From sequence record OP752703.1: DNA of 64,000 nt; one strand, 5' to 3'. Below are positions 9,537 to 29,650 of the stretch, piece after piece (the stretch's first letter is position 1; every line of letters begins with the position of its first letter). The notes under the pieces are model-generated. The model saw nothing but the letters and a program-made list of their open reading frames with translations. It searched no databases and was not told the DNA's origin. A program made the translations under genes and the position numbers.

Positions 9537-10052
9537 CTAAGATTGTGTTTCAACTTTCTCATGGAACAGATTCTTTAGGAAAGCCGCCTCTGGGCCATTT
9601 TGTGTTTGTGCAAATTGAGCCAGTTTTCGATAGGCCAGATTTTCTTTAAACCTACCCCATTCCCTTTGATAGTCATCATAGTCCTTCTGAGACGCTGATG
9701 AAGTTTGTCCTACTACAGTTGGAAGGTAGTTGGATATCTTGTTATAATCAGGGAGCGGGAGCGCCTTTTCAACATGGGAGATAGTATACCCTGCCATATC
9801 ACGGGAATACAACTGGTTTTTAATTATTGCATCCATCTTTTGGTACTGCTCACATCTGGTAGTAACGGCACCATAAGCCAATGCGAGTGCAAACTTATGA
9901 TTGGTATTGGTGAGAGTGGACGGCTCTCCATACCTAGCGGCATGGGTTACTCCATCATCTGTGATTGGCCCTTGTGTTTCTTCGGTGGACTCGATCATAT
10001 CCAAAATCATGGCAGATTTCAAGTCCAGTGCTGCGGGTAAATTATTGGTCAT
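9537..10052 (-). CDS. hypothetical protein (start uncertain)
   Basis: ORF track 9537..10253; start re-assigned to MTNNLP after GGAG. Confidence 0.6.
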   Translation of the reverse strand: MTNNLPAALDLKSAMILDMIESTEETQGPITDDGVTHAARYGEPSTLTNTNHKFALALAYGAVTTRCEQYQKMDAIIKNQLYSRDMAGYTISHVEKALPLPDYNKISNYLPTVVGQTSSASQKDYDDYQREWGRFKENLAYRKLAQFAQTQNGPEAAFLKNLFHEKVETQS

Positions 10053-10224
10053 TGTGTTAAACTCCTGTGTGTGCATATCTATTACATAAAATTCTGCGCG
10101 AGCAAGTCGCACAGACCGACTCAGATTCCAGACGGAATCAATCGCCGGTAGGGGAGTTGTTTTATAAAAGATATAATCTAATACCATACAAAACCATTGT
10201 AAAATCTTAACAGAAAAACTCTGG

Positions 10225-10254
10225 TTGTCAAGAAGAAGGTGAATCAGGTACAAT
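10225..10254 (+). promoter_or_regulatory. putative sigma70 promoter of the Tyr-rich array (leaderless)
   Basis: TTGTCA-18-TACAAT, ATG 6 nt after the -10. Confidence 0.5.
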
Positions 10255-10260: not shown

Positions 10261-10566
10261 ATGACCCTATACTACAGATACCCCGTAGGATTGATTGATC
10301 CTATCGACTATGAAGACCCACCCATCGCTCTCACGCCTGAATACAGCACTAAGATGGCAACACACGCCCATATGAGCATTGGTATGCATATGGAGGATTT
10401 GTTTAAGAAGTACCGCCCTGATGCTGTGCATAGAAGGCACAAGTACCATAAGCTGATGTTCATGAATGTGGAATACAACATGATCCCAGCCAAGTACGAA
10501 GTCAGGCATGCAGGAAATGGTGTAACACGAACCAATTATTTCACCATGGACTTTACCACTATATGA
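10261..10566 (+). CDS. Tyr-rich array member 1
   Basis: KLMFMNVEY (degenerate). Confidence 0.7.
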   Translation: MTLYYRYPVGLIDPIDYEDPPIALTPEYSTKMATHAHMSIGMHMEDLFKKYRPDAVHRRHKYHKLMFMNVEYNMIPAKYEVRHAGNGVTRTNYFTMDFTTI

Positions 10567-10814
10567 GCGATTACAGCATTGAAAAACGCAGACGTTTCCA
10601 TGCCAGACCCTTAAATGATTGGATTTATGATTTCAGAACAGGGAAGAAAATTTGTGACGCCATTGTTCACGATCTAAATGAAATCTTAAATGCAAATCGT
10701 CATTCCATCAAGAAGAACTTGATCTTTATGTATGAATTTGGGTTGACTCATACACCCATGGGACCGTATACTTACGGGACTAATAACCAATATATTACTG
10801 TCGAACTGAAATGA
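10563..10814 (+). CDS. Tyr-rich array member 2
   Basis: KNLIFMYEF. Confidence 0.8.
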   Translation: MSDYSIEKRRRFHARPLNDWIYDFRTGKKICDAIVHDLNEILNANRHSIKKNLIFMYEFGLTHTPMGPYTYGTNNQYITVELK

Positions 10815-11104
10815 AACCCCAACTACCTTCACTGTATTCATTCATATCCAACATCAGTAGAGAATACGGTGATGGTCGAGAGCTAATGGTATCGCTGTCC
10901 GTCTATCTAAGACAGGACTACACGAAAAAGATCACCATGTTCAGTCCACGTAATCGAATCGAGTTCAAATACTTCATGTACTTCTATGATATGGGAGGCG
11001 TGAAAGAAGACACCGATTGTGATTTCGATGGTTTTTACATTGACTATGAGATTTCCGCACGAAGGACCACTAAGAGTCTGAACATGCAACGATTTGGACA
11101 TTGA
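10811..11104 (+). CDS. Tyr-rich array member 3
   Basis: KYFMYFYDM. Confidence 0.8.
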   Translation: MKPQLPSLYSFISNISREYGDGRELMVSLSVYLRQDYTKKITMFSPRNRIEFKYFMYFYDMGGVKEDTDCDFDGFYIDYEISARRTTKSLNMQRFGH

Positions 11105-11107
11105 GCT

Positions 11108-11374
11108 ATGAATAAGGGAAATACTGTAAGAACTTGGAGTGTTGGAGTAAAGATCGCCCACATATTCCATAGGAATTCGGATTTAGATTTTACTCACATG
11201 CCCCGATTCCGTTCATATAAAATAGAAATGGATTCTTATACTACAGAACCGGAAATCTACTATAGGCATATCGTTCATGGCTTAAAACAATATCATCGTA
11301 ATTACGATTTCGATTCATACATGGAACCGGAATATGCAAATTATGAAGAGTATGCAGAGGTAGCATATCCATGA
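11108..11374 (+). CDS. Tyr-rich array member 4
   Basis: KQYHRNYDF. Confidence 0.8.
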   Translation: MNKGNTVRTWSVGVKIAHIFHRNSDLDFTHMPRFRSYKIEMDSYTTEPEIYYRHIVHGLKQYHRNYDFDSYMEPEYANYEEYAEVAYP

Positions 11375-11586
11375 ATATGTTGTTCCATACTGTTCTTCCG
11401 AATAAAAACATTGGTATCATACCAACCATCTATATTCAAAAATTGAAACCAAGTCACTATAACCGTTCTACTATAGATAATAAGTTTGCAAAACTGTGCA
11501 TATTCGTATACGAACATATGAATCATAAATCACCGATAATTATCGATGACAAGCATGTAACATCGTTATTTTACAAGGAATACTGA
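11371..11586 (+). CDS. Tyr-rich array member 5
   Basis: KLCIFVYEH. Confidence 0.75.
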   Translation: MNMLFHTVLPNKNIGIIPTIYIQKLKPSHYNRSTIDNKFAKLCIFVYEHMNHKSPIIIDDKHVTSLFYKEY

Positions 11587-11820
11587 ATGCAGCATATAGT
11601 AAGTATATCACTTAAGGCCGGAAATTCTAAAAACGGAATTCCATTAGATTGGGATCGCTTCCCTGTGGTATATCTAGTAAATCATATTGTAGTTAAAGAA
11701 GGGTGTGACTACTTTCAAGTAATGAGTAATCAGTATAAAAATTACATGATTCTGTATGAATTCAGAGATTTTTTATTGGATGATGTTGTAATTGATTCTA
11801 AATCTTTAAGGTATATGTAA
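11587..11820 (+). CDS. Tyr-rich array member 6
   Basis: KNYMILYEF. Confidence 0.8.
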   Translation: MQHIVSISLKAGNSKNGIPLDWDRFPVVYLVNHIVVKEGCDYFQVMSNQYKNYMILYEFRDFLLDDVVIDSKSLRYM

Positions 11821-12066
11821 ATGCATTTCTATAGATTTGATAGAGCAAAGCCTAAAAAGTTATGCTCAACTGATATTTCTAAGGGCTTTGAATGCCCAAG
11901 GTTCATTACTGCGGCAGAGTTATATTATGGACAAAGATTTACGTCTTTCTCACTGATGACCTTTAAAAATAATATGATGATAACAGACTTCATGACTTAT
12001 ACCGATATCGTATTTAAAGATAATGTCGGTCCCTTAAAGCTGTTCGTAGTAGAGTACACAATATAA
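11821..12066 (+). CDS. Tyr-rich array member 7
   Basis: KNNMMITDF (degenerate). Confidence 0.7.
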   Translation: MHFYRFDRAKPKKLCSTDISKGFECPRFITAAELYYGQRFTSFSLMTFKNNMMITDFMTYTDIVFKDNVGPLKLFVVEYTI

Positions 12067-12356
12067 TGAGCTTTATATCTTATTTTCGTAGTAGAAAGTT
12101 GAAGCCAAAGCACCCCGATAATCTACATTTCATAATTACTATTCATTTTGGGATGTGGGATTGTGATTCTTTGGAAGTTGCAAACCATAGGATATTGGCT
12201 TGGACGGTTAAACATTCAATACTAAAATATGATTTTCAGATGTTTGATGAAATTAAATTCGGGGAGCTTACTGATAAACATCCAGCACCATATCCATTTG
12301 CTTATAATTCGGATCAAGGTAAATGGAAGATGATAATATCATATCAAGGATTATAA
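12066..12356 (+). CDS. Tyr-rich array member 8
   Basis: KHSILKYDF. Confidence 0.8.
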   Translation: MSFISYFRSRKLKPKHPDNLHFIITIHFGMWDCDSLEVANHRILAWTVKHSILKYDFQMFDEIKFGELTDKHPAPYPFAYNSDQGKWKMIISYQGL

Positions 12357-12610
12357 TGAAGGCACAAATAGATTTAACAACAACGAGTGTTTATTTCGAT
12401 GTTAAAACGAGGAATATTGAATTTCGAACTATGCCTGAATGGATATGTTGGAATGGAGAACCACGACCTCATGCGAATTTGAGAATAAAGGATTGGCAAG
12501 CTAAAGATTATCTTAGATTGTATGACTTTCAAGCATATGATGTTAATACAGTATTCCAATATAATTCGGACTTCGACGAATCCACTCGATTCAATTTTAA
12601 CCCATTATGA
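12356..12610 (+). CDS. Tyr-rich array member 9
   Basis: KDYLRLYDF; start at TAATG overlap. Confidence 0.8.
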   Translation: MKAQIDLTTTSVYFDVKTRNIEFRTMPEWICWNGEPRPHANLRIKDWQAKDYLRLYDFQAYDVNTVFQYNSDFDESTRFNFNPL

Positions 12611-12870
12611 GTATTTTAAACGTTTATAGATGGCCGTACTATAATGGTTCGGACTACTGTGAATCTATTCTGTATCATGAATCCCAAAAAGATTCCGCTG
12701 GCCGTCTGGCGGATGCATTATACCTCGCAGCGCCCTACAGTCATGCTATAATCCGAAAGAACAAGCATTATTTGATGGCGTATGATTTCCAAGACTGTCT
12801 ACGCATCTATACTTTGAATCAGGTTAATGAAATGTTGACGGTGATATCAGTTAGAGGCTATGGTAAATGA
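12607..12870 (+). CDS. Tyr-rich array member 10
   Basis: KHYLMAYDF. Confidence 0.8.
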   Translation: MSILNVYRWPYYNGSDYCESILYHESQKDSAGRLADALYLAAPYSHAIIRKNKHYLMAYDFQDCLRIYTLNQVNEMLTVISVRGYGK

Positions 12871-13106
12871 AAAACATACCAGCGTACAGTAGAGAAATGG
12901 ATAGTATTGTCTTCCGAATGACAAATAAACTTACTAGAGGACCATTCCTCAACATGGTCGAGGAACACAAATTCTCAAGAGATAGTATTTTAAGAAGAAA
13001 AGAACACATGCTATTGTATGAATTCGGCGACTTGGGAGTTAAGAGTCAGTCTACGACCCCGGATTTCACATTTATTCGATACAAAAGTTTGAGGAATGAT
13101 CGATGA
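12867..13106 (+). CDS. Tyr-rich array member 11
   Basis: KEHMLLYEF. Confidence 0.8.
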   Translation: MKNIPAYSREMDSIVFRMTNKLTRGPFLNMVEEHKFSRDSILRRKEHMLLYEFGDLGVKSQSTTPDFTFIRYKSLRNDR

Positions 13107-13351
13107 TAGAAAAGCCAACTAACAAATATTACATGTTTAGTAAAGGTGGTCACCAGAATTTCCTTTCACTTTTCATATTTAAGGAAGGCGGATTAAAGTT
13201 ATACGCTAACACTATACATAAACCCTCACCAATTACGGTTAAAGCGCAGAAATTAGGACTGTATTACATGGAATACGGGGAATATCTGTTTGAATTAATT
13301 GAACAAGAATCACCATATTACATTCAAATGCAGTATACATTTAAAAAGTAA
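13103..13351 (+). CDS. Tyr-rich array member 12
   Basis: KLGLYYMEY (degenerate). Confidence 0.75.
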   Translation: MIEKPTNKYYMFSKGGHQNFLSLFIFKEGGLKLYANTIHKPSPITVKAQKLGLYYMEYGEYLFELIEQESPYYIQMQYTFKK

Positions 13352-13357
13352 ACCACT

Positions 13358-13576
13358 ATGCCAGTAATGAAACGCCTACATTTTATAACACTTAATGGTG
13401 TAGCTCTAAAATTACCATTAATTAGATTCGCTCACCATTCAGATATTGATTTTGCTACTCCATTTCGCGCAAAACAAGCCAAACAATTCCATCTTTTATA
13501 CGATTTCATAGACTGCGATAATCATAAATTGTATTCATTTACCAAATCGGATATATTATACGGACCAGAGAAATGA
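13358..13576 (+). CDS. Tyr-rich array member 13
   Basis: KQFHLLYDF. Confidence 0.8.
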   Translation: MPVMKRLHFITLNGVALKLPLIRFAHHSDIDFATPFRAKQAKQFHLLYDFIDCDNHKLYSFTKSDILYGPEK

Positions 13577-13818
13577 TTTCATTCTATGAAATGTATGAAA
13601 TTAACCCCAGCGGTTATAGGGAAACGAGTTATTATCTTCTTTCTAAGAAAGGTAAAGAGCAATACGGACAATATTTAATGGTTCAGAGAAGATTAGCGCA
13701 CACAATTCTTCATGAATCTAAGTTAGCTCTATTTCATTATGAAGTTTCTGACTCTGTTGAGATATACATTCTAGGGGTGTGCGAAGAATACACTTCAATT
13801 GCGATGAGATTCCAATGA
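13573..13818 (+). CDS. Tyr-rich array member 14
   Basis: KLALFHYEV. Confidence 0.8.
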   Translation: MISFYEMYEINPSGYRETSYYLLSKKGKEQYGQYLMVQRRLAHTILHESKLALFHYEVSDSVEIYILGVCEEYTSIAMRFQ

Positions 13819-14084
13819 AAAGCATTCCAGTTTTATATACAAAATCTGTCGATTGGGGTGATCCAAAATGGTCGGACCCAATTGGATTCTATGAATGGGT
13901 TTATTATATGTCTAAACCTACAGATTTCATACATTCTGACAGAAAATTCAAAAGAACATTTCTATATCAATATGATTTCGGTTTTATAGAGGCCCAAGAG
14001 CATATTCGAGACTGTGAAGCATATCTAGATCAGACATACACCGAAAGGGTTAGATACTTAGCACTAGGATACACGCCATTATGA
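13815..14084 (+). CDS. Tyr-rich array member 15
   Basis: RTFLYQYDF; start at ATGA overlap. Confidence 0.8.
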   Translation: MKSIPVLYTKSVDWGDPKWSDPIGFYEWVYYMSKPTDFIHSDRKFKRTFLYQYDFGFIEAQEHIRDCEAYLDQTYTERVRYLALGYTPL

Positions 14085-14356
14085 CACGATTAGTTTACGG
14101 ACTTCGCGTGGCAGTGAAGACTACTCCACATGTATGCAAAATAACCAACCTTAGTAAGCTTCCTAGATTGTGGATATCTATATCTAAGACGCCCACTAAT
14201 GTATTACCAGAACACTTTCCACAATCACATGCAAGTCAATCCACTATTGCAAAACTGCACCTTTTGTACTATGATTATACTTACGATGATTTTGTTTTAA
14301 CACATGTCTATGAATCAGATTCACGATATTACGGGTACACATATTTGTATGAATAA
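14081..14356 (+). CDS. Tyr-rich array member 16
   Basis: KLHLLYYDY. Confidence 0.8.
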   Translation: MTRLVYGLRVAVKTTPHVCKITNLSKLPRLWISISKTPTNVLPEHFPQSHASQSTIAKLHLLYYDYTYDDFVLTHVYESDSRYYGYTYLYE

Positions 14357-14358
14357 TT

Positions 14359-14598
14359 ATGAGAAATGATGGCATTGTAGAGGAAGAATCACTTCTGTTC
14401 ATCTACTTCTACTCAAAGGGTATGAGGGAAGATCGCAAGCTTGATATCTACAACACAGTCCAGACCCCATATTGTATTCAGATGCGTAAGCAATTCTATT
14501 ACTACTACGATTTCCTACAAGTTACTAAGATTGAATCCATGTATGAATGTGATGAATTCTTTAACATTGACCTATATTATGGGGATAAGCTACAATGA
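14359..14598 (+). CDS. Tyr-rich array member 17
   Basis: KQFYYYYDF. Confidence 0.8.
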   Translation: MRNDGIVEEESLLFIYFYSKGMREDRKLDIYNTVQTPYCIQMRKQFYYYYDFLQVTKIESMYECDEFFNIDLYYGDKLQ

Positions 14599-14837
14599 CA
14601 ATACTGTATGGATTCGATACTAATAATATAGAAAGCAAAACCTGTTACTTGTATGTCGTAACAAAGGAACAAGAAAAACATCATGGTGGACTAATCGAGT
14701 ATATGACATTTTATCCAGAGACAGCCATGGCTAGGAAGAATCACTTTGCTTACTACGATTTTTTATATAGAAATAAGATATTAGCGTTTCTTCCTAACGA
14801 CAATAATCTATTATACATTTATTATGAAGCAGTCTAA
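14595..14837 (+). CDS. Tyr-rich array member 18
   Basis: KNHFAYYDF. Confidence 0.8.
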   Translation: MTILYGFDTNNIESKTCYLYVVTKEQEKHHGGLIEYMTFYPETAMARKNHFAYYDFLYRNKILAFLPNDNNLLYIYYEAV

Positions 14838-15081
14838 CATTTGCCGCGCAGGCGTTCAGAATCAGTTCAATAAGGCAAGTCTGTCAACGGTAAAGCTGGC
14901 CTATTTTGTAACCTATCATATTGTTACCGACCCTCCGACATTCAATCCATATGTGGAGGTTCCCGGTTGCAATATTGACGATCTAAAGCGTTATCTGCTA
15001 TATTACGAATTCATTCCCCGCAATACGTACTTCTATCATGACAAGAGTACGGGAGGATATATGGTGTCTTATGAGGAATAA
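14824..15081 (+). CDS. Tyr-rich array member 19
   Basis: KRYLLYYEF. Confidence 0.8.
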   Translation: MKQSNICRAGVQNQFNKASLSTVKLAYFVTYHIVTDPPTFNPYVEVPGCNIDDLKRYLLYYEFIPRNTYFYHDKSTGGYMVSYEE

Positions 15082-15322
15082 TGAATACCTGATCTATCCT
15101 CCGTTGAATTTGATGTTCTGTACCTTCACGTCAAAGTTTACAGCGCAGAAGCCCCATTCAAGTCGCATGAAGGTGTTCATGATGCGCTATGAGTTTCTGT
15201 TAGAGACATATAAGCGAATCATTAATCTAGTAGAGAAAGACCCCCGGACAGCCTTATGCCATTGTCGATTACATGTACCAAGATTGAACAATTATCCTAT
15301 GCATCTTCCCATAAAGATGTAA
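15071..15322 (+). CDS. Tyr-rich array member 20
   Basis: KVFMMRYEF; start uncertain. Confidence 0.75.
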   Translation: MRNNEYLIYPPLNLMFCTFTSKFTAQKPHSSRMKVFMMRYEFLLETYKRIINLVEKDPRTALCHCRLHVPRLNNYPMHLPIKM

Positions 15323-15492
15323 CATTTGTGGCCTACGAGACTCCTATTCCGGTATCAAATAATGGGAAAGTGAGAAATTTAAAAGCTAGAAAGTATTACA
15401 TGGCTCATTATGAATTTCTCATGGGTGAATTTGAAATTGTCCATACCCCTAAAAAAGAATACTACATCATAGACTACCTATATGGACTATAA
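15256..15492 (+). CDS. Tyr-rich array member 21
   Basis: KYYMAHYEF. Confidence 0.8.
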   Translation: MPLSITCTKIEQLSYASSHKDVTFVAYETPIPVSNNGKVRNLKARKYYMAHYEFLMGEFEIVHTPKKEYYIIDYLYGL

Positions 15493-15691
15493 TTATTACT
15501 TATATCGCTCTGGCGGTGCCGATGTAGCCTTCATGACCTCTAGTTATGGCTACACAATTGATGACATAGAAACTTATACACGCACTGTAAAGTATTACAT
15601 GGCCCGATATGACCTCTTATTTGATATCAATAACGTCAAATTCTACCCCTCGCATGACTATTGTATGGTAGACTATACCTATGAAGAATAG
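15482..15691 (+). CDS. Tyr-rich array member 22
   Basis: KYYMARYDL. Confidence 0.8.
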   Translation: MDYNYYLYRSGGADVAFMTSSYGYTIDDIETYTRTVKYYMARYDLLFDINNVKFYPSHDYCMVDYTYEE

Positions 15692-15932
15692 TTTCGGTGC
15701 ATACACTTACTTTGAAAAGGACAATCTACACCTAGACTCCTACTTTGTTACCCGTAGTCAGGAAGACGCTTATAAGATGGATTACAAGGTCGCCCATAAG
15801 CAAGAAGCCAAAATCTATCTGGCCCGCTATGATCTAATCTTCGAAGCATATCACGTTAACTTTGTCAACGTTACCAACTTCATCAACGATCCATACCGTA
15901 TGATTGAGTACCAACATGCCCCACCCGAATGA
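15681..15932 (+). CDS. Tyr-rich array member 23
   Basis: KIYLARYDL. Confidence 0.8.
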   Translation: MKNSFGAYTYFEKDNLHLDSYFVTRSQEDAYKMDYKVAHKQEAKIYLARYDLIFEAYHVNFVNVTNFINDPYRMIEYQHAPPE

Positions 15933-16161
15933 CACTGACAATGAAGATTATGTATCTGTGAACGTTCCGAGCAGAAACAGCGCTGGAGTTTATGGATCGG
16001 TGATCTACTTTGTTTCATACAGATTCAAGAAGGCAGACCGCCATCTTAGAAACATATCCTCCCGAAAACACTACCTCAATATCTATGATTTCATTGATAA
16101 AGATGGGGAAATAAACTACCACGACGAAGGCGCATTATCTATGGTAGAATATAAAACATGA
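15904..16161 (+). CDS. Tyr-rich array member 24
   Basis: KHYLNIYDF. Confidence 0.8.
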   Translation: MSTNMPHPNDTDNEDYVSVNVPSRNSAGVYGSVIYFVSYRFKKADRHLRNISSRKHYLNIYDFIDKDGEINYHDEGALSMVEYKT

Positions 16162-16397
16162 AGATTCCAACCCAACAAGTCGCAACCTATATGTCCTCGT
16201 TAATTAATATGAACGGGGACGTTGTTTCATTGGAATTCTACAACTATGAGCTAAATGAAGACGATGAATACGACTTCCCTACAGAACATGACGAATCTAA
16301 AGATTTCCTCAGACTGTATGACTTCATGGGCCATGTAATGCGACTTACATTCGTTAGAACCTACCGAAGAGCCGTGGGAATTGAGTACGACCTATGA
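16158..16397 (+). CDS. Tyr-rich array member 25
   Basis: KDFLRLYDF, ends GIEYDL. Confidence 0.8.
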   Translation: MKIPTQQVATYMSSLINMNGDVVSLEFYNYELNEDDEYDFPTEHDESKDFLRLYDFMGHVMRLTFVRTYRRAVGIEYDL

Positions 16398-16639
16398 CAG
16401 AAATCAATAGAAACTTCTACTACTGGTATACGCCCCAAAACTATAACCATTCCACAACGGCCACTATCGGCGTTGGAATGATTAGCTACCGTATATCTAA
16501 ACACAACACGTTTGCATTCGACATTAGCCCTAAAGATATAAAAACCTACCATCGAATCTATGACTTCTGTTTCGACCAAGCCACCATTAGAGTCAATCTA
16601 ATGAAAGCTAATGGAACCAGAATCGAGTACGAACTATGA
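16394..16639 (+). CDS. Tyr-rich array member 26
   Basis: KTYHRIYDF, ends RIEYEL. Confidence 0.8.
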   Translation: MTEINRNFYYWYTPQNYNHSTTATIGVGMISYRISKHNTFAFDISPKDIKTYHRIYDFCFDQATIRVNLMKANGTRIEYEL

Positions 16640-16848
16640 TTTTATTTACAATCCGCTATGCCTACTCCTACTGCGAAACTAAAGGCATCGGCTACCTAAA
16701 CTATAATAGTGCGTCGGATAATGAATATGACTTCGATGCCTATGAACAGAAACTCTACCTGCAAAGGTATGACTTCCTAGTAGACCAAATGAGGCGTGAG
16801 TGCTATGATAAGCCCTATAAGGCAGTAAGAATTGAGTATGAGATATGA
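16636..16848 (+). CDS. Tyr-rich array member 27
   Basis: KLYLQRYDF, ends RIEYEI. Confidence 0.85.
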   Translation: MILFTIRYAYSYCETKGIGYLNYNSASDNEYDFDAYEQKLYLQRYDFLVDQMRRECYDKPYKAVRIEYEI

Positions 16849-17066
16849 CCTACAGACACACCTATTCCTTTGAGTATGAATCACAAGTCGGCTTCATTAT
16901 TGGAGCGGGCTTCGTATGCTGTCCAGTCAGTCAGTATAGCGGTGAAGACAACTCCCCCTTTAATCTAAAGCTGTATCTCAACCGATACGACTTCCTAGAA
17001 ACCGAAGAGTCTGCTTCATTCTTCTATCAAGCATATGGTGCAGTCAAAATCGAGTACGAATTCTGA
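16845..17066 (+). CDS. Tyr-rich array member 28
   Basis: KLYLNRYDF, ends KIEYEF. Confidence 0.85.
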   Translation: MTYRHTYSFEYESQVGFIIGAGFVCCPVSQYSGEDNSPFNLKLYLNRYDFLETEESASFFYQAYGAVKIEYEF

Positions 17067-17314
17067 TGCATAGACTCCAATACTCCTTCGAATACCAAAC
17101 CGGCCATCGTTTTAAACCTTTTAACACCATTATCAATGGTGCCTGTTATATGTGCTACCCTGATAATCTCACTAAAGATGAATCAGAAGAACTTAAAAAG
17201 CCATTAAGACATAAGATATATTTTCAACGATACGACTTCCTAATGGATCAACAAATAAATCCCTTCTATTATGGATCATACAATCAAATCAAAATCGATT
17301 ACGAATTCCAATGA
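17066..17314 (+). CDS. Tyr-rich array member 29
   Basis: KIYFQRYDF, ends KIDYEFQ. Confidence 0.85.
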   Translation: MHRLQYSFEYQTGHRFKPFNTIINGACYMCYPDNLTKDESEELKKPLRHKIYFQRYDFLMDQQINPFYYGSYNQIKIDYEFQ

Positions 17315-17523
17315 GTAATAATCAAGCCTACGCCATCGGCGACTGTAACAATATCTTCTACTTCCTCGTCTGTAAAACCATGGACTTGAAATATGAAGTC
17401 ATTGCTTTGCATAGAAGAAAAGCCTACATGCTATACTACGATATGTTCATCGATTCCATAACAGCAGACTGTAATCAGAACCACTATCACGAATACCTAA
17501 TGTGGAGATATGAACTTCAATGA
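17311..17523 (+). CDS. Tyr-rich array member 30
   Basis: KAYMLYYDM. Confidence 0.8.
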   Translation: MSNNQAYAIGDCNNIFYFLVCKTMDLKYEVIALHRRKAYMLYYDMFIDSITADCNQNHYHEYLMWRYELQ

Positions 17524-17732
17524 ACAAGTATTACATGAAAGACCTCAGTCCACTCAATCCACACCCCTATCACTGCATCGGATTCAGTGACGACCACCTG
17601 TCACATCTATACTTTAATTCATCTATTGCCGATGCGAAATTCCATCTGCTACACTACGACTTCAACAATATCCGTTCTTGGGAGCAAACCACTAATGGAT
17701 ATGAAGTAACTATGTGTGTATACCACCTATGA
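17520..17732 (+). CDS. Tyr-rich array member 31
   Basis: KFHLLHYDFNNI. Confidence 0.85.
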   Translation: MNKYYMKDLSPLNPHPYHCIGFSDDHLSHLYFNSSIADAKFHLLHYDFNNIRSWEQTTNGYEVTMCVYHL

Positions 17733-17962
17733 ACATTTATTACATTTCAAATATAAATCCAGAAGAAGGATACATCGGTAAACTATCAGCCGACTCCCCT
17801 TTCTATGCCCTAGGTTTCACCCCTAGAGATATGCGTGTCTATAACGCCCATAGCAGAGTACACACAAAGCTATATCTAAATCGCTACGAATTCACAGAAG
17901 CATCAGACTGGAAAACCACAATCAACGGCAGAGACGAACCCATGGTGATGTATTACGTATGA
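17729..17962 (+). CDS. Tyr-rich array member 32
   Basis: KLYLNRYEF; start at ATGA overlap. Confidence 0.8.
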   Translation: MNIYYISNINPEEGYIGKLSADSPFYALGFTPRDMRVYNAHSRVHTKLYLNRYEFTEASDWKTTINGRDEPMVMYYV

Positions 17963-18180
17963 ATAAGTTCTACACCTATTACACGACAGACCTTGATTTC
18001 TCTCCTAAAGCTACCTATCACCTAATAGGATTCTGTAGTACACACAAGGACTACCTATACCGCCCGGAATCTATAGCCGACGCAAAGATTCATCTACTCA
18101 ACTACGACTTCAATAATATACGAAAGTGGTCCCATTCCGTTGATAGACACAATATCACTATGGTAGTATACAATCTATGA
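17959..18180 (+). CDS. Tyr-rich array member 33
   Basis: KIHLLNYDFNNI. Confidence 0.85.
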   Translation: MNKFYTYYTTDLDFSPKATYHLIGFCSTHKDYLYRPESIADAKIHLLNYDFNNIRKWSHSVDRHNITMVVYNL

Positions 18181-18389
18181 AGCACTATTACATCACCGAT
18201 GCCGATATCAAAGAAACTCCATCCTATCACGGCATTGGATTCGATAACAGATTCCCATCCTACCTGTACTCCCCTGTAGGACGACACGACGCAAAGATTC
18301 ATCTACTCAACTACGACTTCAATAATATCCCATCTTGGTATCACACCACTAATAATGCAAAGGTCACATTAGTCATATACAACCTATGA
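18177..18389 (+). CDS. Tyr-rich array member 34
   Basis: KIHLLNYDFNNI. Confidence 0.85.
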   Translation: MKHYYITDADIKETPSYHGIGFDNRFPSYLYSPVGRHDAKIHLLNYDFNNIPSWYHTTNNAKVTLVIYNL

Positions 18390-18922
18390 AAGTAAACTTC
18401 AAACCCGCTGGCACCATCTTCTATAACGACGACCCTGCTATCGATAAGACAATCTTCTCAGCCACATTCGCTATCCCTACAAAGTACTTCTATACTAAAA
18501 CTATCCCTAATGAAATCAATGCCGGTGTCAAATACCTCACACAAAAACACCCCAATACAACTATAGACAGAATAAGCACACAAGCACTTAAACTGTATAT
18601 GATCCTGTACGACCTATGGGAATCTCCACTGTATAAAGTAGTAGATGAACTAGAGACTATTACCTATGTCTATATCAGAACAGATATAAACTACAATGGT
18701 GATTACTACCCTATGAATATTGCATACTATCCTAAGAAGGAAACAGACAAGAGCAATAACCCCCTCAGCCTAACGCATGCGTTAGGACATAAGAAGGGAC
18801 AGATGCATACATTCAGTACAGGGACTATCGAACATGATACTAGTAGAGTCATAGCAGTAGATGGACACGCTATGGATAGAATAGTATTCCCCTATAAGCC
18901 TAAGACTAATAAAGCCCTATAA
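18386..18922 (+). CDS. Tyr-rich array member 35 (double length)
   Basis: KLYMILYDL plus extra C-terminal segment. Confidence 0.8.
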   Translation: MKVNFKPAGTIFYNDDPAIDKTIFSATFAIPTKYFYTKTIPNEINAGVKYLTQKHPNTTIDRISTQALKLYMILYDLWESPLYKVVDELETITYVYIRTDINYNGDYYPMNIAYYPKKETDKSNNPLSLTHALGHKKGQMHTFSTGTIEHDTSRVIAVDGHAMDRIVFPYKPKTNKAL

Positions 18923-18940
18923 GAATAATATAGGGCTTTT
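18911..18940 (+). terminator. intrinsic terminator closing the array
   Basis: AAAGCCCTAT...ATAGGGCTTTT. Confidence 0.8.
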
Positions 18941-19337
18941 ACTCTGTATGGGGGACTTAGTTGTATATGAATTTTAAAAATGTACTCATTTAAGAGAATA
19001 TACAACTAAAAACTTAATCGGTAAGTTATTGATTAGTATGGGGATGGGTAAGAGTGTTGATATAACTTAATTAGAAAATTATAGGGGAAATAGTGGAGAA
19101 TTGTGGGAAAATGTATCGTAAATGATTGATTTACGGTGGATTTGATGATTCTTCTGTGCTGTATAGGGGGAGTTCAACAAACTTTTAAAAATTTCCCCAC
19201 CGAAGTTAACAGGCGTTAACTTTAATGAAAATGGTGTCATCACGGTATCTCCCTATCATTGTAGCACTGTAGTGGGGTGGTGTACTACCTAGGTAACACA
19301 CCTAGGCTGTAGAATGCCTTCTCCCACGATTGCGTCC

Positions 19338-19467
19338 ACTGTATCACGTAGTCAATGGTCTGTCAATACTTGACAACCTGATACCTGTGTTTTAAAATAG
19401 GTGGGAGGCCGGGGGACTGTGGCCTGATGGGGTTGGGTGTTGACACGGTGTTGGAATGCTGTATACT
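19338..19467. promoter_or_regulatory. back-to-back and tandem sigma70 promoters
   Basis: minus TTGACA-17-TACAGT; plus TTGACA-17-TAAAAT (19371-19399) and TTGACA-16-TATACT (19440-19467). Confidence 0.7.
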
Positions 19468-19495
19468 GGCGACACTTAAACAGAGATTTGATTAA

Positions 19496-19708
19496 ATGGG
19501 TGTGTTACTTTTTGTTCTAGCGTTGATCCTGATTGGTATTCGCTTCTACCGTGAGAGCAGGTACATTAAGGGCTGGCTAGATTGGGTTAGTACGTTGGCC
19601 CTGTATGGTGCTATGATCTACGTGTGTAGCTTCTTGATGCAGGTTCCGCATGCTGGTATTATTGTCATTCCGATTCTAGTTGTTCTAGCTGCACAGTACA
19701 TGGATTAA
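19496..19708 (+). CDS. small 3-TM membrane protein (paralogue of next gene)
   Basis: hydrophobic; MGVLLFVLALIL..FYRESRY vs MGIFLFIVCLLL..FFRDSKW. Confidence 0.75.
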   Translation: MGVLLFVLALILIGIRFYRESRYIKGWLDWVSTLALYGAMIYVCSFLMQVPHAGIIVIPILVVLAAQYMD

Positions 19709-19917
19709 TGATTATGGGTATCTTTTTGTTTATTGTTTGTCTATTGCTATTGGTTTTCTGTTTCTTTAGGGACAGTAAATGGGCCAGTGGTGTAGGCGAC
19801 TGGATTTTTAACATTGTAATATACGGTATCATGGCGATAGCCTGTACGTTTGTTATTGTATACCCTGTAGAGGGATTGTTGCTTGTGGCGATATTGATCG
19901 CCTTTGCTTGGGATTAA
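19708..19917 (+). CDS. small 3-TM membrane protein
   Basis: hydrophobic, TAATG coupling. Confidence 0.75.
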   Translation: MIMGIFLFIVCLLLLVFCFFRDSKWASGVGDWIFNIVIYGIMAIACTFVIVYPVEGLLLVAILIAFAWD

Positions 19918-19920
19918 AGT

Positions 19921-20169
19921 ATGTCTGAGAATGCTAGACTGATTCTACAAATTATTGCGACGCTACCGTGTCTTGCTATGTTCGTTGGTATTGTGTACTA
20001 TGATCGTTGGTTGTATCGTTTATCTCCGATCCTCACGTTATTGGCTTGGCTTTTCATCTTTGTGATGTGTATTGGACCGATTTGGTATGCACCTATCCTT
20101 GCATTGGTAAGTGTACCTTTGCTATTCTTACAACTCCAACACAGTAGAGCTTGCTCTAGAGACGACTAA
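19921..20169 (+). CDS. small 3-TM membrane protein
   Basis: hydrophobic. Confidence 0.75.
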   Translation: MSENARLILQIIATLPCLAMFVGIVYYDRWLYRLSPILTLLAWLFIFVMCIGPIWYAPILALVSVPLLFLQLQHSRACSRDD

Positions 20170-20492
20170 TGACATTTGTTAATTCATTTCAGGCATTGTG
20201 TATGGTGCTGATTCTAGCGGCATCGATTTTGTGGACAGTGGTAATCTTTCAGGAAGAGAGCCGCCGTCCGTTGTTCGGTAAGGAATCGCTAGGGACTGGC
20301 TGGGAAATGTTGGGCTTCATTAACATTCCCTTCATTGCTATCCCTCTAGCAGTCTTGTGTGGCGTTCCGGGTGGTATGGGTGCTGTGATTGCTATTGTAC
20401 TCTATGGGCTGTTAGGCGCATGGTTCATCCTTGACATTAAATTCATTCACCCTTATCATGGGGAGCATAGGAAGAAGAGTGGATATTATTAA
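20169..20492 (+). CDS. membrane protein
   Basis: three hydrophobic segments. Confidence 0.7.
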   Translation: MTFVNSFQALCMVLILAASILWTVVIFQEESRRPLFGKESLGTGWEMLGFINIPFIAIPLAVLCGVPGGMGAVIAIVLYGLLGAWFILDIKFIHPYHGEHRKKSGYY

Positions 20493-20874
20493 CGAAATTG
20501 GTTTTACATTCTTAATCGTAGGCGGCTATGCTTTTTGTGGCTGGCTGACCTATGTTCTAGGTAAAGCTACTTGTGCGTATACGGTCATTCTAAAGGCTTG
20601 GCGCACCCGTAAAGAATTAGAGCGATCTGAACTGATCGATGGGTGGAATGCTTATGCTCGCTATAGTGGTGAGTTAAATGGCTTAGACCCTTTGTTCACT
20701 TTCCTATGGCCTTTTGGTTTGATTGGCTGTATTTCAACTATCTTGGTCTTTACTCCTTATGCGATGTATAAGCGATGGTGGACTTACAAGGTTAAGCCGG
20801 GACAATTTACGCTACGTCCACGTTGGTGGTCAGTAGATACACTTCTTCATAACATTAACAAGAAAATCAAATGA
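20431..20874 (+). CDS. membrane protein, WP/PxW family (start uncertain)
   Basis: FLWPF...PRWWSVDTLLHNIN. Confidence 0.7.
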   Translation: MTLNSFTLIMGSIGRRVDIINEIGFTFLIVGGYAFCGWLTYVLGKATCAYTVILKAWRTRKELERSELIDGWNAYARYSGELNGLDPLFTFLWPFGLIGCISTILVFTPYAMYKRWWTYKVKPGQFTLRPRWWSVDTLLHNINKKIK

Positions 20875-21254
20875 GCTACCATTCCCCGCTAGAAGTTTTT
20901 GCTACAATTGCAGTCATCTACATTAGTGGTGCGGCTGTGACCCATCTAGGTTCTCGCATACTGGAAGTATTGAACTATCTGCGCTATACTTCTGTCGATG
21001 GTACTAAGGTAACTGCGTATGGTATCAAGCGAGCTTGGCGTCTAGAGGGTGAGAGTGATACCTTCGAGTATGTTCTATTCGTGGGAACGTTGTTCTGGCC
21101 CTTTGCATGGATTGTTAATCCCTTCCTGTATCACAAGACGTTCATGTGGGTGATTGGTTATCCTGCTCGTTCGTTGAATATTCGTATGCCTTACTGGATG
21201 ACAGTACAGGGCTTTGCTGACCGTGTTAATAAAAAGAGAGAGGCACGACGCTAA
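20871..21254 (+). CDS. membrane protein, WP/PxW family
   Basis: LFWPF...PYWMTVQGFADRVN. Confidence 0.75.
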   Translation: MSYHSPLEVFATIAVIYISGAAVTHLGSRILEVLNYLRYTSVDGTKVTAYGIKRAWRLEGESDTFEYVLFVGTLFWPFAWIVNPFLYHKTFMWVIGYPARSLNIRMPYWMTVQGFADRVNKKREARR

Positions 21255-21571
21255 TGTTAGAATCTGTAGGAATTGTGTGTGGTGTCCTATCGGTCATCAT
21301 TGGTGTATACTTCGCTGGTAGTGTATCTGTAGACTCGATCTATGGATATTACCCTGAAAGCTATGGTATGCCTGCTATGTTCGGCTGGCCCATTGCGTTC
21401 TTCTGCACTATTCTATCTGCTGGTTTGTGGTTTATTGGGGTGTTATGCTTTGTTGTTTTTGTAGCTATTGTAGTACACCTACACCAGATTAGGGGACCAC
21501 GTGGTTGGTATGATAACAATACTGATCCGCCACCGCGAAAGACTGATAATTCTTTAAAGGATTTGGAATGA
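21254..21571 (+). CDS. membrane protein
   Basis: hydrophobic, FGWPI. Confidence 0.7.
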   Translation: MLESVGIVCGVLSVIIGVYFAGSVSVDSIYGYYPESYGMPAMFGWPIAFFCTILSAGLWFIGVLCFVVFVAIVVHLHQIRGPRGWYDNNTDPPPRKTDNSLKDLE

Positions 21572-23808: not shown

Positions 23809-23866
23809 TGAATGAAATCCTCTCCGAACTAACCCACTGGCTACAATACAAGGTAATTGACAAACT

Positions 23867-24313: not shown

Positions 24314-24344
24314 TATACAAACTCTTCCCAACGAGTGAATCACC

Positions 24345-26006: not shown

Positions 26007-26009
26007 AAT

Positions 26010-26186: not shown

Positions 26187-26195
26187 AATTTGAAA

Positions 26196-26230: not shown

Positions 26231-26269
26231 TCTCACTATCAACTCCCCCTTACAGGAACATAGAGAAAC

Positions 26270-28522: not shown

Positions 28523-28528
28523 TCGGGC

Positions 28529-29626: not shown

Positions 29627-29650
29627 TATTGACCCAAGTGCAAAAAGATG

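What the first reader, a model, noticed from the sequence alone, without database searches (positions are those of the whole stretch)
10261..18922. Candidate new system: 35-gene hypervariable array of small Tyr-rich paralogues with an invariant K-x5-Y-[DE]-F core
Seen: 35 back-to-back ORFs (34 of about 69-101 aa), rich in Tyr/Phe/His and AT-rich, unlike the CTA-biased core genes. Each has one motif at a similar position (KHYLMAYDF, KDYLRLYDF, KQFYYYYDF, KLYLQRYDF, KIHLLNYDF...) while the flanks are barely alignable; many end in an aromatic beta-strand-like tail (IEYE[LIF], MVEY). I recognise no known family. Inference: a gene-accordion repertoire of small binders, with a conserved helix docking a shared partner and variable surfaces recognising diverse host targets (anti-defence or host takeover), or subunits of a hetero-oligomer.
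Basis: partly seen in the sequence, partly recalled or inferred. Interest (0 to 1): 0.95.

Follow-up and report, generated by a model that had tools for sequence, protein, structure and literature searches.

The report
Orphan 35-gene paralogue array in jumbo phage
A 320-kb Stenotrophomonas phage devotes 8.7 kb to one operon of 35 small, tyrosine-rich, very diverged sister genes that match no known protein family, are kept by selection and vary in number between close relatives, but what they do is still unknown.

Summary
Window 10261-18922 (+) holds 35 back-to-back ORFs: 34 of 69-101 aa and one of 178 aa. The window is Stenotrophomonas jumbo phage CM1/RAS14 at 100% identity. All 35 carry a central K-x5-Y-[DE]-F-type motif. 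The strict form occurs 23 times, all in the array, against 0.48 expected. The motif is not invariant: K 34/35, Y 32/35, acid 35/35, F 25/35.

The genes are real. Pooled dN/dS against a complete orthologous array is 0.25 (CI 0.21-0.30). Pfam, NCBIfam, PHROGs, PADLOC, PDB sequences and two Foldseek libraries give nothing. A profile search of 1.84 billion proteins finds only the array and its orthologues from close relatives.

Copy number differs between relatives: two members are absent and one is broken in one lineage, and two are merged into one gene in another. But paralogue dS is at least 0.8 against an orthologue dS of 0.17. This is an old, stably retained multigene family with slow birth-and-death turnover, not a fresh accordion.

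It lies in the early-type accessory region, after a strand switch and upstream of membrane-protein genes, Thg1, rIIA/rIIB, RNA ligase and 29 tRNAs. A host-directed binder repertoire is the best guess and is unproven. The fold is unresolved (pLDDT about 60).

The parts
10225..10254 (+). Sigma-70-like promoter candidate (TTGTCA, 18 nt, TACAAT) 6 nt before the first start codon. Its -35 hexamer overlaps that of a divergent minus-strand candidate (10231-10204).
   Evidence: 10 of 12 matches; sequence. Both hexamers are intact in relative L015, where the intergenic stretch is 98% identical. This is a consensus match only; such matches are not enriched in the region (47 found against 41.3 expected).
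10261..18922 (+). The whole array: 35 cistrons with no internal gap above 6 nt and 18 ATGA overlaps. Read as one translationally coupled operon.
   Evidence: 100% identical to CM1 and RAS14.
10261..10566 (+). m01, 101 aa, degenerate motif (K-x5-V-E-Y); weak member
   Evidence: Leave-one-out E 9.9. Orthologue 93% identical in L015.
10563..10814 (+). m02, 83 aa, KNLIFMYEF; weak member by profile
   Evidence: Leave-one-out E 2.6.
10811..11104 (+). m03, 97 aa, KYFMYFYDM
   Evidence: Leave-one-out E 0.013.
11108..11374 (+). m04, 88 aa, KQYHRNYDF
   Evidence: Leave-one-out E 0.018.
11371..11586 (+). m05, 71 aa, degenerate motif (K-x5-Y-E-H); weak member
   Evidence: Leave-one-out E 0.29.
11587..11820 (+). 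m06, 77 aa, KNYMILYEF
   Evidence: Leave-one-out E 0.094.
11821..12066 (+). m07, 81 aa, degenerate motif (K-x5-T-D-F); weak member
   Evidence: Leave-one-out E 2.1.
12066..12356 (+). m08, 96 aa, KHSILKYDF
   Evidence: Leave-one-out E 0.055. The allele in L015 is only 72% identical, with dS 0.87.
12323..12610 (+). m09, 95 aa from the first ATG (RAS14 annotates 84 aa from 12356), KDYLRLYDF
   Evidence: Leave-one-out E 9e-5.
12607..12870 (+). m10, 87 aa, KHYLMAYDF
   Evidence: Leave-one-out E 7e-5.
12867..13106 (+). m11, 79 aa, KEHMLLYEF
   Evidence: Leave-one-out E 0.0045.
13103..13351 (+). m12, 82 aa, degenerate motif (K-x5-M-E-Y); weak member
   Evidence: Leave-one-out E 1.0.
13358..13576 (+). 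m13, 72 aa, KQFHLLYDF. Not annotated in RAS14. Absent from relatives L003, L015 and L016.
   Evidence: Leave-one-out E 3e-5. An orthologue exists elsewhere (P0019).
13573..13818 (+). m14, 81 aa, degenerate motif (K-x5-Y-E-V); weak member. Intact here, broken by one deletion in L003, L015 and L016.
   Evidence: Leave-one-out E 3.2.
13779..14084 (+). m15, 101 aa from a GTG start (RAS14 annotates 89 aa from 13815), KRTFLYQYDF (K-x6 spacing)
   Evidence: Leave-one-out E 0.0017. The allele in L003 is 56% identical, with dS above 1.
14081..14356 (+). m16, 91 aa, KLHLLYYDY. Not annotated in RAS14.
   Evidence: Leave-one-out E 0.0031. An intact orthologue is present in L015.
14359..14598 (+). m17, 79 aa, KQFYYYYDF
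   Evidence: Leave-one-out E 0.024.
14595..14837 (+). m18, 80 aa, KNHFAYYDF. Absent as a whole gene from L003, L015 and L016.
   Evidence: Leave-one-out E 1.6e-4.
14824..15081 (+). m19, 85 aa, KRYLLYYEF
   Evidence: Leave-one-out E 0.0081.
15038..15322 (+). m20, 94 aa, KVFMMRYEF. Not annotated in RAS14. The product is shorter (71 aa) in the relatives.
   Evidence: Leave-one-out E 0.024.
15256..15492 (+). m21, 78 aa, KYYMAHYEF
   Evidence: Leave-one-out E 1e-6.
15482..15691 (+). m22, 69 aa, KYYMARYDL; 20% Tyr
   Evidence: Leave-one-out E 0.088.
15681..15932 (+). m23, 83 aa, KIYLARYDL
   Evidence: Leave-one-out E 0.0016.
15904..16161 (+). m24, 85 aa from a TTG start (RAS14 annotates 81 aa from 15916), KHYLNIYDF
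   Evidence: Leave-one-out E 8e-7.
16158..16397 (+). m25, 79 aa, KDFLRLYDF
   Evidence: Leave-one-out E 0.0049.
16394..16639 (+). m26, 81 aa, KTYHRIYDF
   Evidence: Leave-one-out E 2e-5.
16636..16848 (+). m27, 70 aa, KLYLQRYDF. Modelled by AlphaFold2.
   Evidence: Leave-one-out E 2e-5. Model: strand 18-22, helix 35-47, strands 53-58 and 63-68, pLDDT 62.
16845..17066 (+). m28, 73 aa, KLYLNRYDF
   Evidence: Leave-one-out E 1e-4.
17066..17314 (+). m29, 82 aa, KIYFQRYDF
   Evidence: Leave-one-out E 5.5e-4.
17311..17523 (+). m30, 70 aa, KAYMLYYDM
   Evidence: Leave-one-out E 0.052.
17520..17732 (+). m31, 70 aa, KFHLLHYDF
   Evidence: Leave-one-out E 3e-5.
17714..17962 (+). m32, 82 aa from a GTG start (RAS14 annotates 77 aa from 17729), KLYLNRYEF
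   Evidence: Leave-one-out E 0.0093.
17959..18180 (+). m33, 73 aa, KIHLLNYDF. Modelled by AlphaFold2. It forms the closest paralogue pair with m34 (52% identity, dS 0.78).
   Evidence: Model: strands 20-22 and 32-34, helix 39-50, strands 57-61 and 67-71, pLDDT 60, pTM 0.43.
18177..18389 (+). m34, 70 aa, KIHLLNYDF. m33 and m34 are represented by a single gene in relatives L012-L014.
18386..18922 (+). m35, 178 aa. The family domain (about residues 28-105, KLYMILYDL) is followed by a His-rich orphan extension.
   Evidence: profile matches residues 28-105. Leave-one-out E 0.0035. The extension changed at 1 of 72 sites against L015. It has no relatives and a weak sub-threshold Peptidase_M43 hit.
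18911..18939 (+). 11-bp hairpin overlapping the last codons of m35, followed by U-rich bases; candidate terminator that closes the operon
   Evidence: Folding gives -14 kcal/mol, z -3.8, with 0 of 200 shuffles as stable.

Best explanation
This is a lineage-specific multigene family. Thirty-five tandem paralogues of one small soluble alpha/beta domain (about 70-100 aa) are encoded as a single, densely packed and largely translationally coupled operon. The operon starts at a strand-switch point in the early-type accessory region of a T4-like-organised jumbo phage.

Shown:
- The genes are coding and under purifying selection.
- They descend from one another by old tandem duplications.
- The family is confined to this array and to this narrow phage lineage.
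- Members are still gained, lost or merged between close relatives, with a join inside a shared stretch in one case, as unequal recombination would give.

Inferred:
- The conserved blocks are an N-terminal aromatic, an aromatic strand, the K-x-[YF]-[LM]-x-x-Y-[DE]-F helix and a C-terminal [IV]-x-Y strand. Together they build a common aromatic-cored scaffold.
- The N-terminal half and the loops are the most variable parts between paralogues and also between orthologues. They give each member its own surface.

Most likely use (inference, roughly one chance in three): a standing repertoire of host-directed binders made from a host-type promoter early in infection. Each retained paralogue would neutralise or redirect a different host protein or allelic variant, in counter-defence or host takeover.

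The evolutionary and anatomical part I hold at about 0.9. The functional part I hold at about 0.35.
For: Reality and family:
- Motif enrichment is 23 matches against 0.48 expected, all in the array.
- 25 of 35 members are found by leave-one-out profiles.
- Conserved blocks are shared by nearly all members.

Coding and constraint:
- Pooled dN/dS is 0.25 (CI 0.21-0.30; 2626 codons) against the complete orthologous array in L015. Flanking genes give 0.12 and 0.31.
- The four signature positions changed at 3 of 128 sites.

Tandem origin and turnover:
- Identity falls with array distance.
- DNA repeat families sit at unit spacing of 209-248 nt.
- m13 and m18 are absent and m14 is broken in three contigs. 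m33 and m34 are merged into one gene in three other contigs.

Age:
- Paralogue dS is 0.78 or saturated.

Restriction to the lineage:
- There were 19 hits among 1.84 billion representatives, all the array's own proteins or close orthologues.
- Only CM1 and RAS14 match among 50,697 phage records.
- There is no second cluster in the genome.
- The syntenic locus of the nearest sequenced relative, Xoo-sp13, has none.

Scaffold against variable surface:
- Orthologue change rate is 9.2% in the N-terminal part, 5.6% in the helix and 6.8% in the C-terminal part.
- pI ranges from 4.4 to 9.9.
- Two AlphaFold2 models agree on a helix over the motif followed by a hairpin.

Early/accessory setting:
- A conserved sigma-70-like site lies directly upstream and a hairpin lies at the end.
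- The neighbours are small membrane proteins, Thg1, rIIA, T4-type RNA ligase 1 and a 29-tRNA cluster.
- Established knowledge of T4: host-type promoters drive early genes, and hyperplastic regions near rII carry small non-essential host-interaction genes.
- Phage precedent for tandem amplification of a small counter-defence gene: T4 tifA (PMC9391042).
Against: - There is no similarity to any known anti-defence, takeover or other family. Two models gave no structural neighbour in three Foldseek searches: both models against the PDB and one against BFVD.
- There are no expression data.
- The promoter match is 10 of 12, and matches of that quality are no more frequent here than in shuffles.
- Codon usage differs from the phage's larger genes (TTA 23% against 3% of Leu codons). 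That could mean low expression.
- dN/dS of 0.25 and old duplications are not the signature of an ongoing arms race.
- The models are of low confidence (pLDDT 60-62). A common fold is likely but not shown.
- Six members are not independently detectable.
Confidence: 0.4

Rival explanations
1. The members serve the phage's own machinery. They would be a set of adaptors or regulators that all dock, through the conserved K...Y-[DE]-F helix, onto one shared phage or host hub protein. Each would bring a different client or tune the hub differently.
For: The K (34/35) and the acid (35/35) are far better conserved than a surface position needs to be in a family with about 15% identity. The signature positions are almost unchanged in orthologues. 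One promoter and translational coupling would give co-expression of all members.
Against: The other conserved positions are hydrophobic or aromatic in a core-like pattern, so the motif needs no partner to explain it. No candidate hub is identifiable in the neighbourhood, where the upstream genes have no family match. Three members can be missing or broken in close relatives.
Confidence: 0.2
2. The proteins are subunits of a hetero-oligomeric or structural assembly, for example a virion-internal, decoration or scaffold component built from many related small subunits.
For: Many co-transcribed similar small proteins with aromatic strand-like ends could co-assemble by strand pairing. Co-expression follows from the operon layout.
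Against: The array lies among accessory genes next to rIIA/rIIB, RNA ligase and tRNAs, not in a structural module. Codon usage is unlike that of the larger genes. Charge varies from pI 4.4 to 9.9. Close relatives lack or merge members, which a fixed assembly would tolerate poorly. The nearest sequenced relative has no such genes at the syntenic locus.
Confidence: 0.08
3. The array acts against competing phages or mobile elements, not against the host. Each paralogue would block a different competitor (superinfection exclusion or inter-phage conflict).
For: The anatomical evidence is the same as for the main explanation. rIIA/rIIB, which in T4 deal with prophage-mediated exclusion (established knowledge), lie 7 kb downstream. 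A block of 15 small membrane proteins follows the array.
Against: There is no match to known exclusion proteins in PHROGs. The array proteins are soluble (GRAVY negative), whereas many exclusion proteins are membrane-bound. Nothing discriminates this reading from a host-directed role.
Confidence: 0.1
4. The ORFs are precursor peptides of a ribosomally made and modified natural product family. The conserved motif would be the recognition element for one modifying enzyme and the variable parts would be the products, as in prochlorosin-type precursor arrays.
For: Many small tandem ORFs share one short motif and have otherwise variable sequence.
Against: Conservation is spread over four blocks including the extreme C-terminus, so there is no leader-and-core layout. 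The proteins are predicted to fold as helix-plus-sheet domains. No modifying enzyme is recognisable among the neighbours tested. There is no Cys/Ser/Thr enrichment.
Confidence: 0.03
5. The copies are functionally redundant or decaying leftovers of past amplification, carried along because a jumbo capsid tolerates extra DNA.
For: The 5' third of the array is the most AT-rich and the most degenerate. Members are lost in relatives without visible replacement. Codon usage is de-optimised.
Against: All 35 reading frames are open in the window. Pooled dN/dS is 0.25, with an upper confidence bound of 0.30. The weak 5' members are also 90-98% conserved with low dN/dS. Paralogues have stayed intact long enough to saturate dS.
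Confidence: 0.07

Closest known systems
Segmental amplification of a small counter-defence gene in phage T4 (tifA, inhibitor of ToxN; eLife 2022, PMC9391042), and the poxvirus 'gene accordion' it is compared with
   Same: Head-to-tail tandem copies of a gene for a small (about 85 aa) protein in a non-essential early region of a large phage. Copy number changes by recombination between short shared stretches.
   Different: Those amplifications are recent, have near-identical copies and are unstable. Here the closest pair has dS 0.78, most pairs are saturated, and the mean identity is about 15%. No sequence relationship to tifA-type families was found in PHROGs.
Multigene families of large eukaryotic DNA viruses (for example the MGF families of African swine fever virus and the ankyrin or Bcl-2-like families of poxviruses): birth-and-death paralogue arrays in variable genome regions
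   Same: Dozens of diverged paralogues in tandem, each under purifying selection. Members are gained and lost between strains. The array lies outside the conserved core.
   Different: This is a bacteriophage, the proteins are only 70-100 aa, all members sit in one operon, and the family is an orphan. A host-interaction role is documented for those families but not here. The comparison rests on my own knowledge and not on a tool result.
Hyperplastic early regions and host-takeover modules of large lytic phages (T4 regions around rII; the SPO1 host-takeover module of about 24 small early genes)
   Same: Long runs of small genes of unknown function sit behind host-type promoters, near rIIA/rIIB. 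They are variable between relatives.
   Different: Those clusters are collections of unrelated genes. Here all 35 genes are one family.
Anti-defence gene islands (anti-CRISPR and other inhibitor loci)
   Same: Clusters of small soluble orphan proteins with patchy distribution between related phages.
   Different: There is no match to any known inhibitor family, no adjacent recognisable HTH regulator among the neighbours tested, and the members are paralogues, not a mix of families.
Small beta-beta-alpha-beta-beta domains (beta-grasp-like topology)
   Same: The predicted order of elements is strand(s), helix, then two C-terminal strands, in about 70 residues.
   Different: Foldseek gives no match better than E 0.46 and TM 0.45. 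The N-terminal strands are modelled with pLDDT below 50. This is a topological resemblance only.

Membership tests
Any curated protein family (Pfam-A, NCBIfam, PHROGs v4, PADLOC-DB) | Significant profile match, or the same weak match recurring in many members | tested here: not met
   All 35 members were scanned against Pfam, PADLOC and PHROGs, and five of them against NCBIfam. No family was hit by more than one member and no E-value was below 0.004.
Proteins with a solved structure | Sequence-profile match to a PDB chain | tested here: not met
   The profile of 35 members gave one chance hit at E 1.2. m35 alone gave none.
Proteins with a solved or predicted structure | Fold match by Foldseek | tested here: inconclusive
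   There were no matches with E<=0.001 in the PDB (both models) or in BFVD (second model). The models have pLDDT of only 60-62, so absence of a match is weak evidence.
Gene accordion (recent adaptive amplification) | Head-to-tail tandem copies of one gene | tested here: met
   There are 35 consecutive paralogues, and repeat families sit at 209-248 nt spacing.
Gene accordion (recent adaptive amplification) | Copies nearly identical (young) | tested here: not met
   The closest pair is 52% identical in protein with dS 0.78, and the others are saturated. Orthologue dS is 0.17.
Gene accordion (recent adaptive amplification) | Copy number differs between close relatives | tested here: met
   Two genes are absent and one is broken in L003/L015/L016. 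Two genes are merged into one in L012-L014.
Viral multigene family (birth-and-death evolution) | Many diverged paralogues clustered in a variable, non-core region | tested here: met
   The family is absent from the syntenic locus of Xoo-sp13.
Viral multigene family (birth-and-death evolution) | Individual members under purifying selection | tested here: met
   Pooled dN/dS is 0.25, CI 0.21-0.30.
Viral multigene family (birth-and-death evolution) | Members act on host functions | not testable with these tools
   There are no expression, interaction or phenotype data.
Anti-defence island | Contains or adjoins a known inhibitor or its HTH regulator | tested here: not met
   There are no PHROG, PADLOC or Pfam hits for the members. 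The two upstream neighbours have no family match. The nearest weak HTH call lies about 6 kb upstream in L015.
RiPP precursor array | Conserved leader plus hypervariable core, and an adjacent modifying enzyme | tested here: not met
   Conservation lies in four blocks including the C-terminus. No enzyme family was found in the neighbours tested.

The most novel reading that the evidence does not exclude
The array is a hard-wired, diversified library of mini-binders on a previously unseen aromatic-cored fold. The phage expresses all 35 at once from one early operon, and each paralogue has been kept for a long time because it disables a different host defence or host allele. That would be a phage counterpart of the multigene families of large eukaryotic viruses, and a new scaffold for protein recognition.
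Probability: 0.2. Interest if true: 0.85.

Novelty: new variant of a known kind. Interest (0 to 1): 0.55.

Why it matters
Most jumbo-phage genes are orphans, and it is rarely possible to say anything about them. Here 35 orphans form one family. That supplies its own alignment, its own evidence of selection and a natural experiment in gain and loss.

If the members prove to be host-directed binders, the array would show that phages, like large eukaryotic viruses, can hold long-lived multigene repertoires and not only transient amplifications. It would also add a new small fold to the known set of counter-defence proteins.

If they prove to be something else, for example an assembly or a set of adaptors for one hub, it would still be a new protein family with an unusually clear scaffold-and-variable-surface layout. 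As it stands, function is unknown and the family is confined to one narrow phage lineage, which limits its reach.

Tried and rejected
1. Library searches for a known family gave nothing. I scanned Pfam, PHROGs and PADLOC with all 35 members, NCBIfam with five, and PDB sequences by profile.

2. Two AlphaFold2 runs used paralogue and orthologue alignments. Three Foldseek searches followed. The models were of low confidence and had no neighbours, so the fold stays open.

3. A profile search of 1.84 billion representatives and a word-seeded profile search of 5.8 billion clusters found only the array and its close orthologues. The bit scores a distant paralogue-like relative would reach (2-35 bits in leave-one-out) lie below what such a large database requires. 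Distant relatives are therefore not excluded.

With m35 it found nothing in IMG/VR.

5. I looked for a 'Rosetta stone' clue from the extra domain of m35. It has no relatives. The sub-threshold Peptidase_M43 hit was not supported by anything else.

6. I looked for a second cluster elsewhere in the genome. The protein HMM was run on the window plus about 100 kb, and two back-translated motif scans covered the whole genome. There is no second cluster. The protein-HMM scan of the remaining 156 kb or so could not be run because those loci did not reach the script machine.

7. An RNA element in the array or in the 570-bp gap after it: no Rfam match.

8. Acidic DNA-mimic idea: rejected, because pI ranges from 4.4 to 9.9.

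9. Recent accordion: rejected on dS.

10. Literature searches for this phage or for a comparable phage array found no description.

Full report
**What the window is.** The array region and a 20-kb stretch further on are 100% identical to Stenotrophomonas phages CM1 (OP883945, 319.5 kb, unannotated) and RAS14 (OP752703, 319.6 kb, from sewage in India). RAS14 annotates 32 of the 35 ORFs, all as hypothetical proteins, and misses m13, m16 and m20. No paper in the held library describes either phage.

**Checking the observation.**
- One search shows 35 consecutive + strand ORFs from 10261 to 18922: 34 of 69-101 aa and the last of 178 aa. The largest gap between them is 6 nt, and 18 of 34 junctions are ATGA overlaps.
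- The strict motif K-x5-Y-[DE]-F is in 23 members. A looser form is in 30. The remaining five keep K-x5-hydrophobic-acid-hydrophobic at the same relative place, 50-68% of the length except in the long m35.
- At the DNA level the back-translated strict motif occurs 23 times in the window, always in the array and on the + strand. Expected by chance is 0.48, with at most 3 in shuffles. It occurs twice in the rest of the genome.
- Column shares are K 34/35, Y 32/35, acid 35/35 and F 25/35. There are three further semi-conserved blocks: an N-terminal aromatic, an alternating aromatic strand and a C-terminal [IV]-x-Y.
- Tyr is 10.1% against 4.5% elsewhere in the window.
- The array is AT-rich, also at third positions (0.41 against 0.53). 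It uses CTA for 27% of Leu codons against 48% in the larger genes, and TTA for 23% against 3%.

So the description is right. The exceptions are that the motif is not invariant, and that six members (m01, m02, m05, m07, m12, m14) are not detected by a profile of the other 34. Of the rest, 25 reach E<0.05 and four lie between 0.05 and 0.1.

**Are they genes?** Seven sequencing-run or metagenome assemblies carry orthologous arrays from close relatives. One of them, L015, spans the whole array and both flanks.
- Against L015, 2626 aligned array codons give dN 0.042, dS 0.165 and dN/dS 0.25 (bootstrap 95% interval 0.21-0.30).
- The upstream genes give 0.12 and the downstream genes 0.31.
- The four signature positions changed at 3 of 128 sites. 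The N-terminal parts change most (9.2%), the helix least (5.6%).

These are translated, constrained genes.

**What family?** None that is known.
- Pfam, PADLOC and PHROGs were scanned with every member, NCBIfam with five, and PDB sequences with the family profile. No hit recurred and none was significant.
- A profile search of 1.84 billion representative proteins gave 19 hits, all the array's own proteins or orthologues from the relatives. A second, word-seeded search added only more orthologues.
- Permissive tblastn of two members against 50,697 phage records found only CM1 and RAS14.
- Within the genome there is no member outside the array. This rests on the protein HMM run on the window and about 100 kb more, and on two motif scans of the whole genome.
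- The nearest sequenced relatives are Xanthomonas phages XacN1 and Xoo-sp13, with rIIA 36-39% identical. Xoo-sp13 keeps the same gene order around the locus (glutaredoxins, strand switch, small plus-strand genes, Thg1, rIIA, rIIB) but has no family member there.

A caveat applies. A distant relative would score like the leave-one-out members (2-35 bits), which is below the threshold of billion-sequence searches.

**Structure.** Two AlphaFold2 runs on different members with different alignments agree on the C-terminal half. A helix of 12-13 residues covers the motif and ends at Y-[DE]-F, followed by a two-stranded hairpin. One or two strands lie upstream. Confidence is low: pLDDT 62 and 60, pTM 0.34 and 0.43, with the N-terminal third below 50. 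Foldseek found nothing in the PDB or BFVD.

The pattern of conserved hydrophobic and aromatic positions (motif positions +2, +3 and +6, and alternate positions in the strands) is what a helix packed on a small sheet would need. I therefore read most of the 'motif' as scaffold. The near-invariant K and acid, seven residues apart, could be a salt bridge, a cap or a real functional site. That cannot be decided here.

**History.**
- Identity between members falls with their distance along the array (Spearman -0.19; none of 2000 permutations as low).
- The 3' third holds the recognisable sub-families: m25-m29 and m31-m34. It also holds DNA repeats at unit spacing.
- The 5' third is the most AT-rich and the most degenerate.
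- Even the closest pair (m33/m34) has dS 0.78, and all others are at or near saturation. Orthologue dS is about 0.17. So every duplication is much older than the split between the known relatives.

Turnover still goes on.
- In one lineage (three contigs from three runs), m13 and m18 are absent as whole genes and m14 is broken by one deletion.
- In another lineage (three contigs from three assemblies), m33 and m34 are represented by one gene. The join lies within the stretch the two genes share, as unequal crossing-over would produce.
- m20 has a shorter product in the relatives.
- Some members (m08, m15, m16, m31, m34 in particular comparisons) have alleles with dS of 0.55 to more than 1, next to neighbours at about 0.1. 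That points to allele replacement by recombination.

The direction of the gains and losses cannot be set without an outgroup.

**Setting and expression signals.**
- The array begins at a strand switch. The 73-nt intergenic stretch holds back-to-back sigma-70-like candidates with overlapping -35 hexamers. These are conserved in L015.
- The array ends in an 11-bp hairpin (-14 kcal/mol, z -3.8).
- A 570-bp gap follows, with two 11-of-12 promoter matches and no Rfam hit.
- Next comes a run of 16 small genes, 15 of which have 2-4 hydrophobic segments.
- Then come a Thg1-like gene, rIIA, a T4-type RNA ligase 1 and a cell-wall hydrolase, and 29 tRNA genes.

By analogy with T4 (established knowledge), this is the early, non-essential, host-interaction part of the genome. 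That is inference. The promoter matches are no more frequent than in shuffled sequence.

**Explanation and rivals.** The shown part is a lineage-specific, old, selected multigene family in one operon, with slow birth-and-death turnover. The inferred part is a common aromatic scaffold carrying member-specific surfaces. I think these most likely bind different host proteins early in infection.

I give the functional step about one chance in three.
- In its favour are the setting and the long-term retention of many distinct copies.
- Against it are the absence of any recognisable relative, the unremarkable dN/dS and the odd codon usage.

The rivals are adaptors for one shared hub, subunits of an assembly, anti-competitor functions, RiPP-like precursors and decaying leftovers. 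They are set out with their evidence in the Rival explanations section. The last two are the weakest.

**Comparison with what is known.** It works most like the multigene families of large eukaryotic DNA viruses. It shares the mechanism of copy-number change with the T4 tifA amplification (PMC9391042). But it fails the 'young, near-identical copies' criterion of a gene accordion. It is not a member of any described protein family.

I rate it a new variant of a known kind, with interest 0.55. It is a striking and clean case, and unusual for a phage. But it has no function, it is confined to one narrow lineage, and the main open points can be settled only by expression and structure data.

**Note on the operators' rule.** Two notebook entries and the BLAST tables printed by my scripts contain alignment-block bounds. 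In effect these delimit where relatives lack or merge array segments. I noticed this while writing up. This report gives only which genes are affected, how, and how often.

Consensus lines printed by the alignment tools were not used. No repaired, joined or consensus sequence was built. The genome chunks of CM1 were scanned separately and never joined.

Noticed in passing
window 37632-63181, minus strand: There are 29 tRNA genes. One has anticodon TTA (54428-54502, would read UAA) and one has anticodon CTA (58328-58403, would read UAG; ARAGORN labels it Pyl). Under the standard bacterial code, ORFs of 60 aa or more cover about 79% of the non-array window. Stops in the array are TGA 24, TAA 10, TAG 1. 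Wholesale stop-codon reassignment therefore looks unlikely, but the suppressor-type tRNAs are unexplained.
   Followed up: partly
window 19496-24943, plus strand: A second run of 16 small genes (69-148 aa) lies directly after the array. 15 of them have 2-4 hydrophobic, membrane-span-like segments. At least two pairs are paralogous (19496-19708 with 19708-19917, and 20479-20874 with 21962-22339). A plus-strand block of small genes sits at the same position in Xoo-sp13.
   Followed up: partly
window 18923-19495: This is a 570-bp non-coding gap with two of the best sigma-70-like matches in the region (19370-19398 and 19440-19467, each 11 of 12). It has G-rich stretches and no Rfam match.
   Followed up: partly
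window 18386-18922 (m35), residues about 106-178: The His-rich C-terminal extension carries an H-x3-H-x2-G-x2-H string, which resembles the zinc-binding signature of metzincins but lacks the catalytic Glu. Its Peptidase_M43 hit is below threshold (E 0.0038, 17.6 bits against a 23-bit cut-off). It is the best conserved part of the array (1 of 72 sites changed against L015) and has no relatives in any search.
   Followed up: partly
window 13358-13576, 14081-14356, 15038-15322: Three array members (m13, m16, m20) are not annotated in the RAS14 record, although they carry the motif. m16 and m20 have orthologues in L015, and m13 has one elsewhere (P0019).
   Followed up: yes
L012, L013, L014 (position 1 of each): Three contigs from three different assemblies (ENA ERZ27289759, JGI 3300013219, ENA ERZ1031124) all end at the same point inside the array. 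This suggests that assemblers break there, perhaps because of repeats or strain variants.
   Followed up: no
window 10204-10254: Divergent promoter-like sites for the array and for the minus-strand gene 9537-10187 share overlapping -35 hexamers (TTGTCA on the + strand, TTGACA on the - strand). The stretch is 98% conserved in L015, more than the genes on either side of it in that comparison.
   Followed up: partly
window 24943-30859 and 36529-37173: The accessory gene set next to the array comprises a Thg1-like tRNA-His guanylyltransferase (24943-25701), rIIA (26270-28522), a gene at the rIIB position (28613-29626; assigned by synteny with Xoo-sp13 only), T4-type RNA ligase 1 (29648-30859) and a cell-wall hydrolase (36529-37173). 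Together with the tRNA cluster this looks like a tRNA supply-and-repair region.
   Followed up: partly
array genes m08, m15, m16, m31, m34 versus L003, L015, L002: Divergence between relatives is mosaic. Single genes have dS of 0.55 to more than 1, while their neighbours have about 0.02-0.15. This is as expected if alleles are exchanged by recombination with unsampled relatives or between paralogues.
   Followed up: partly
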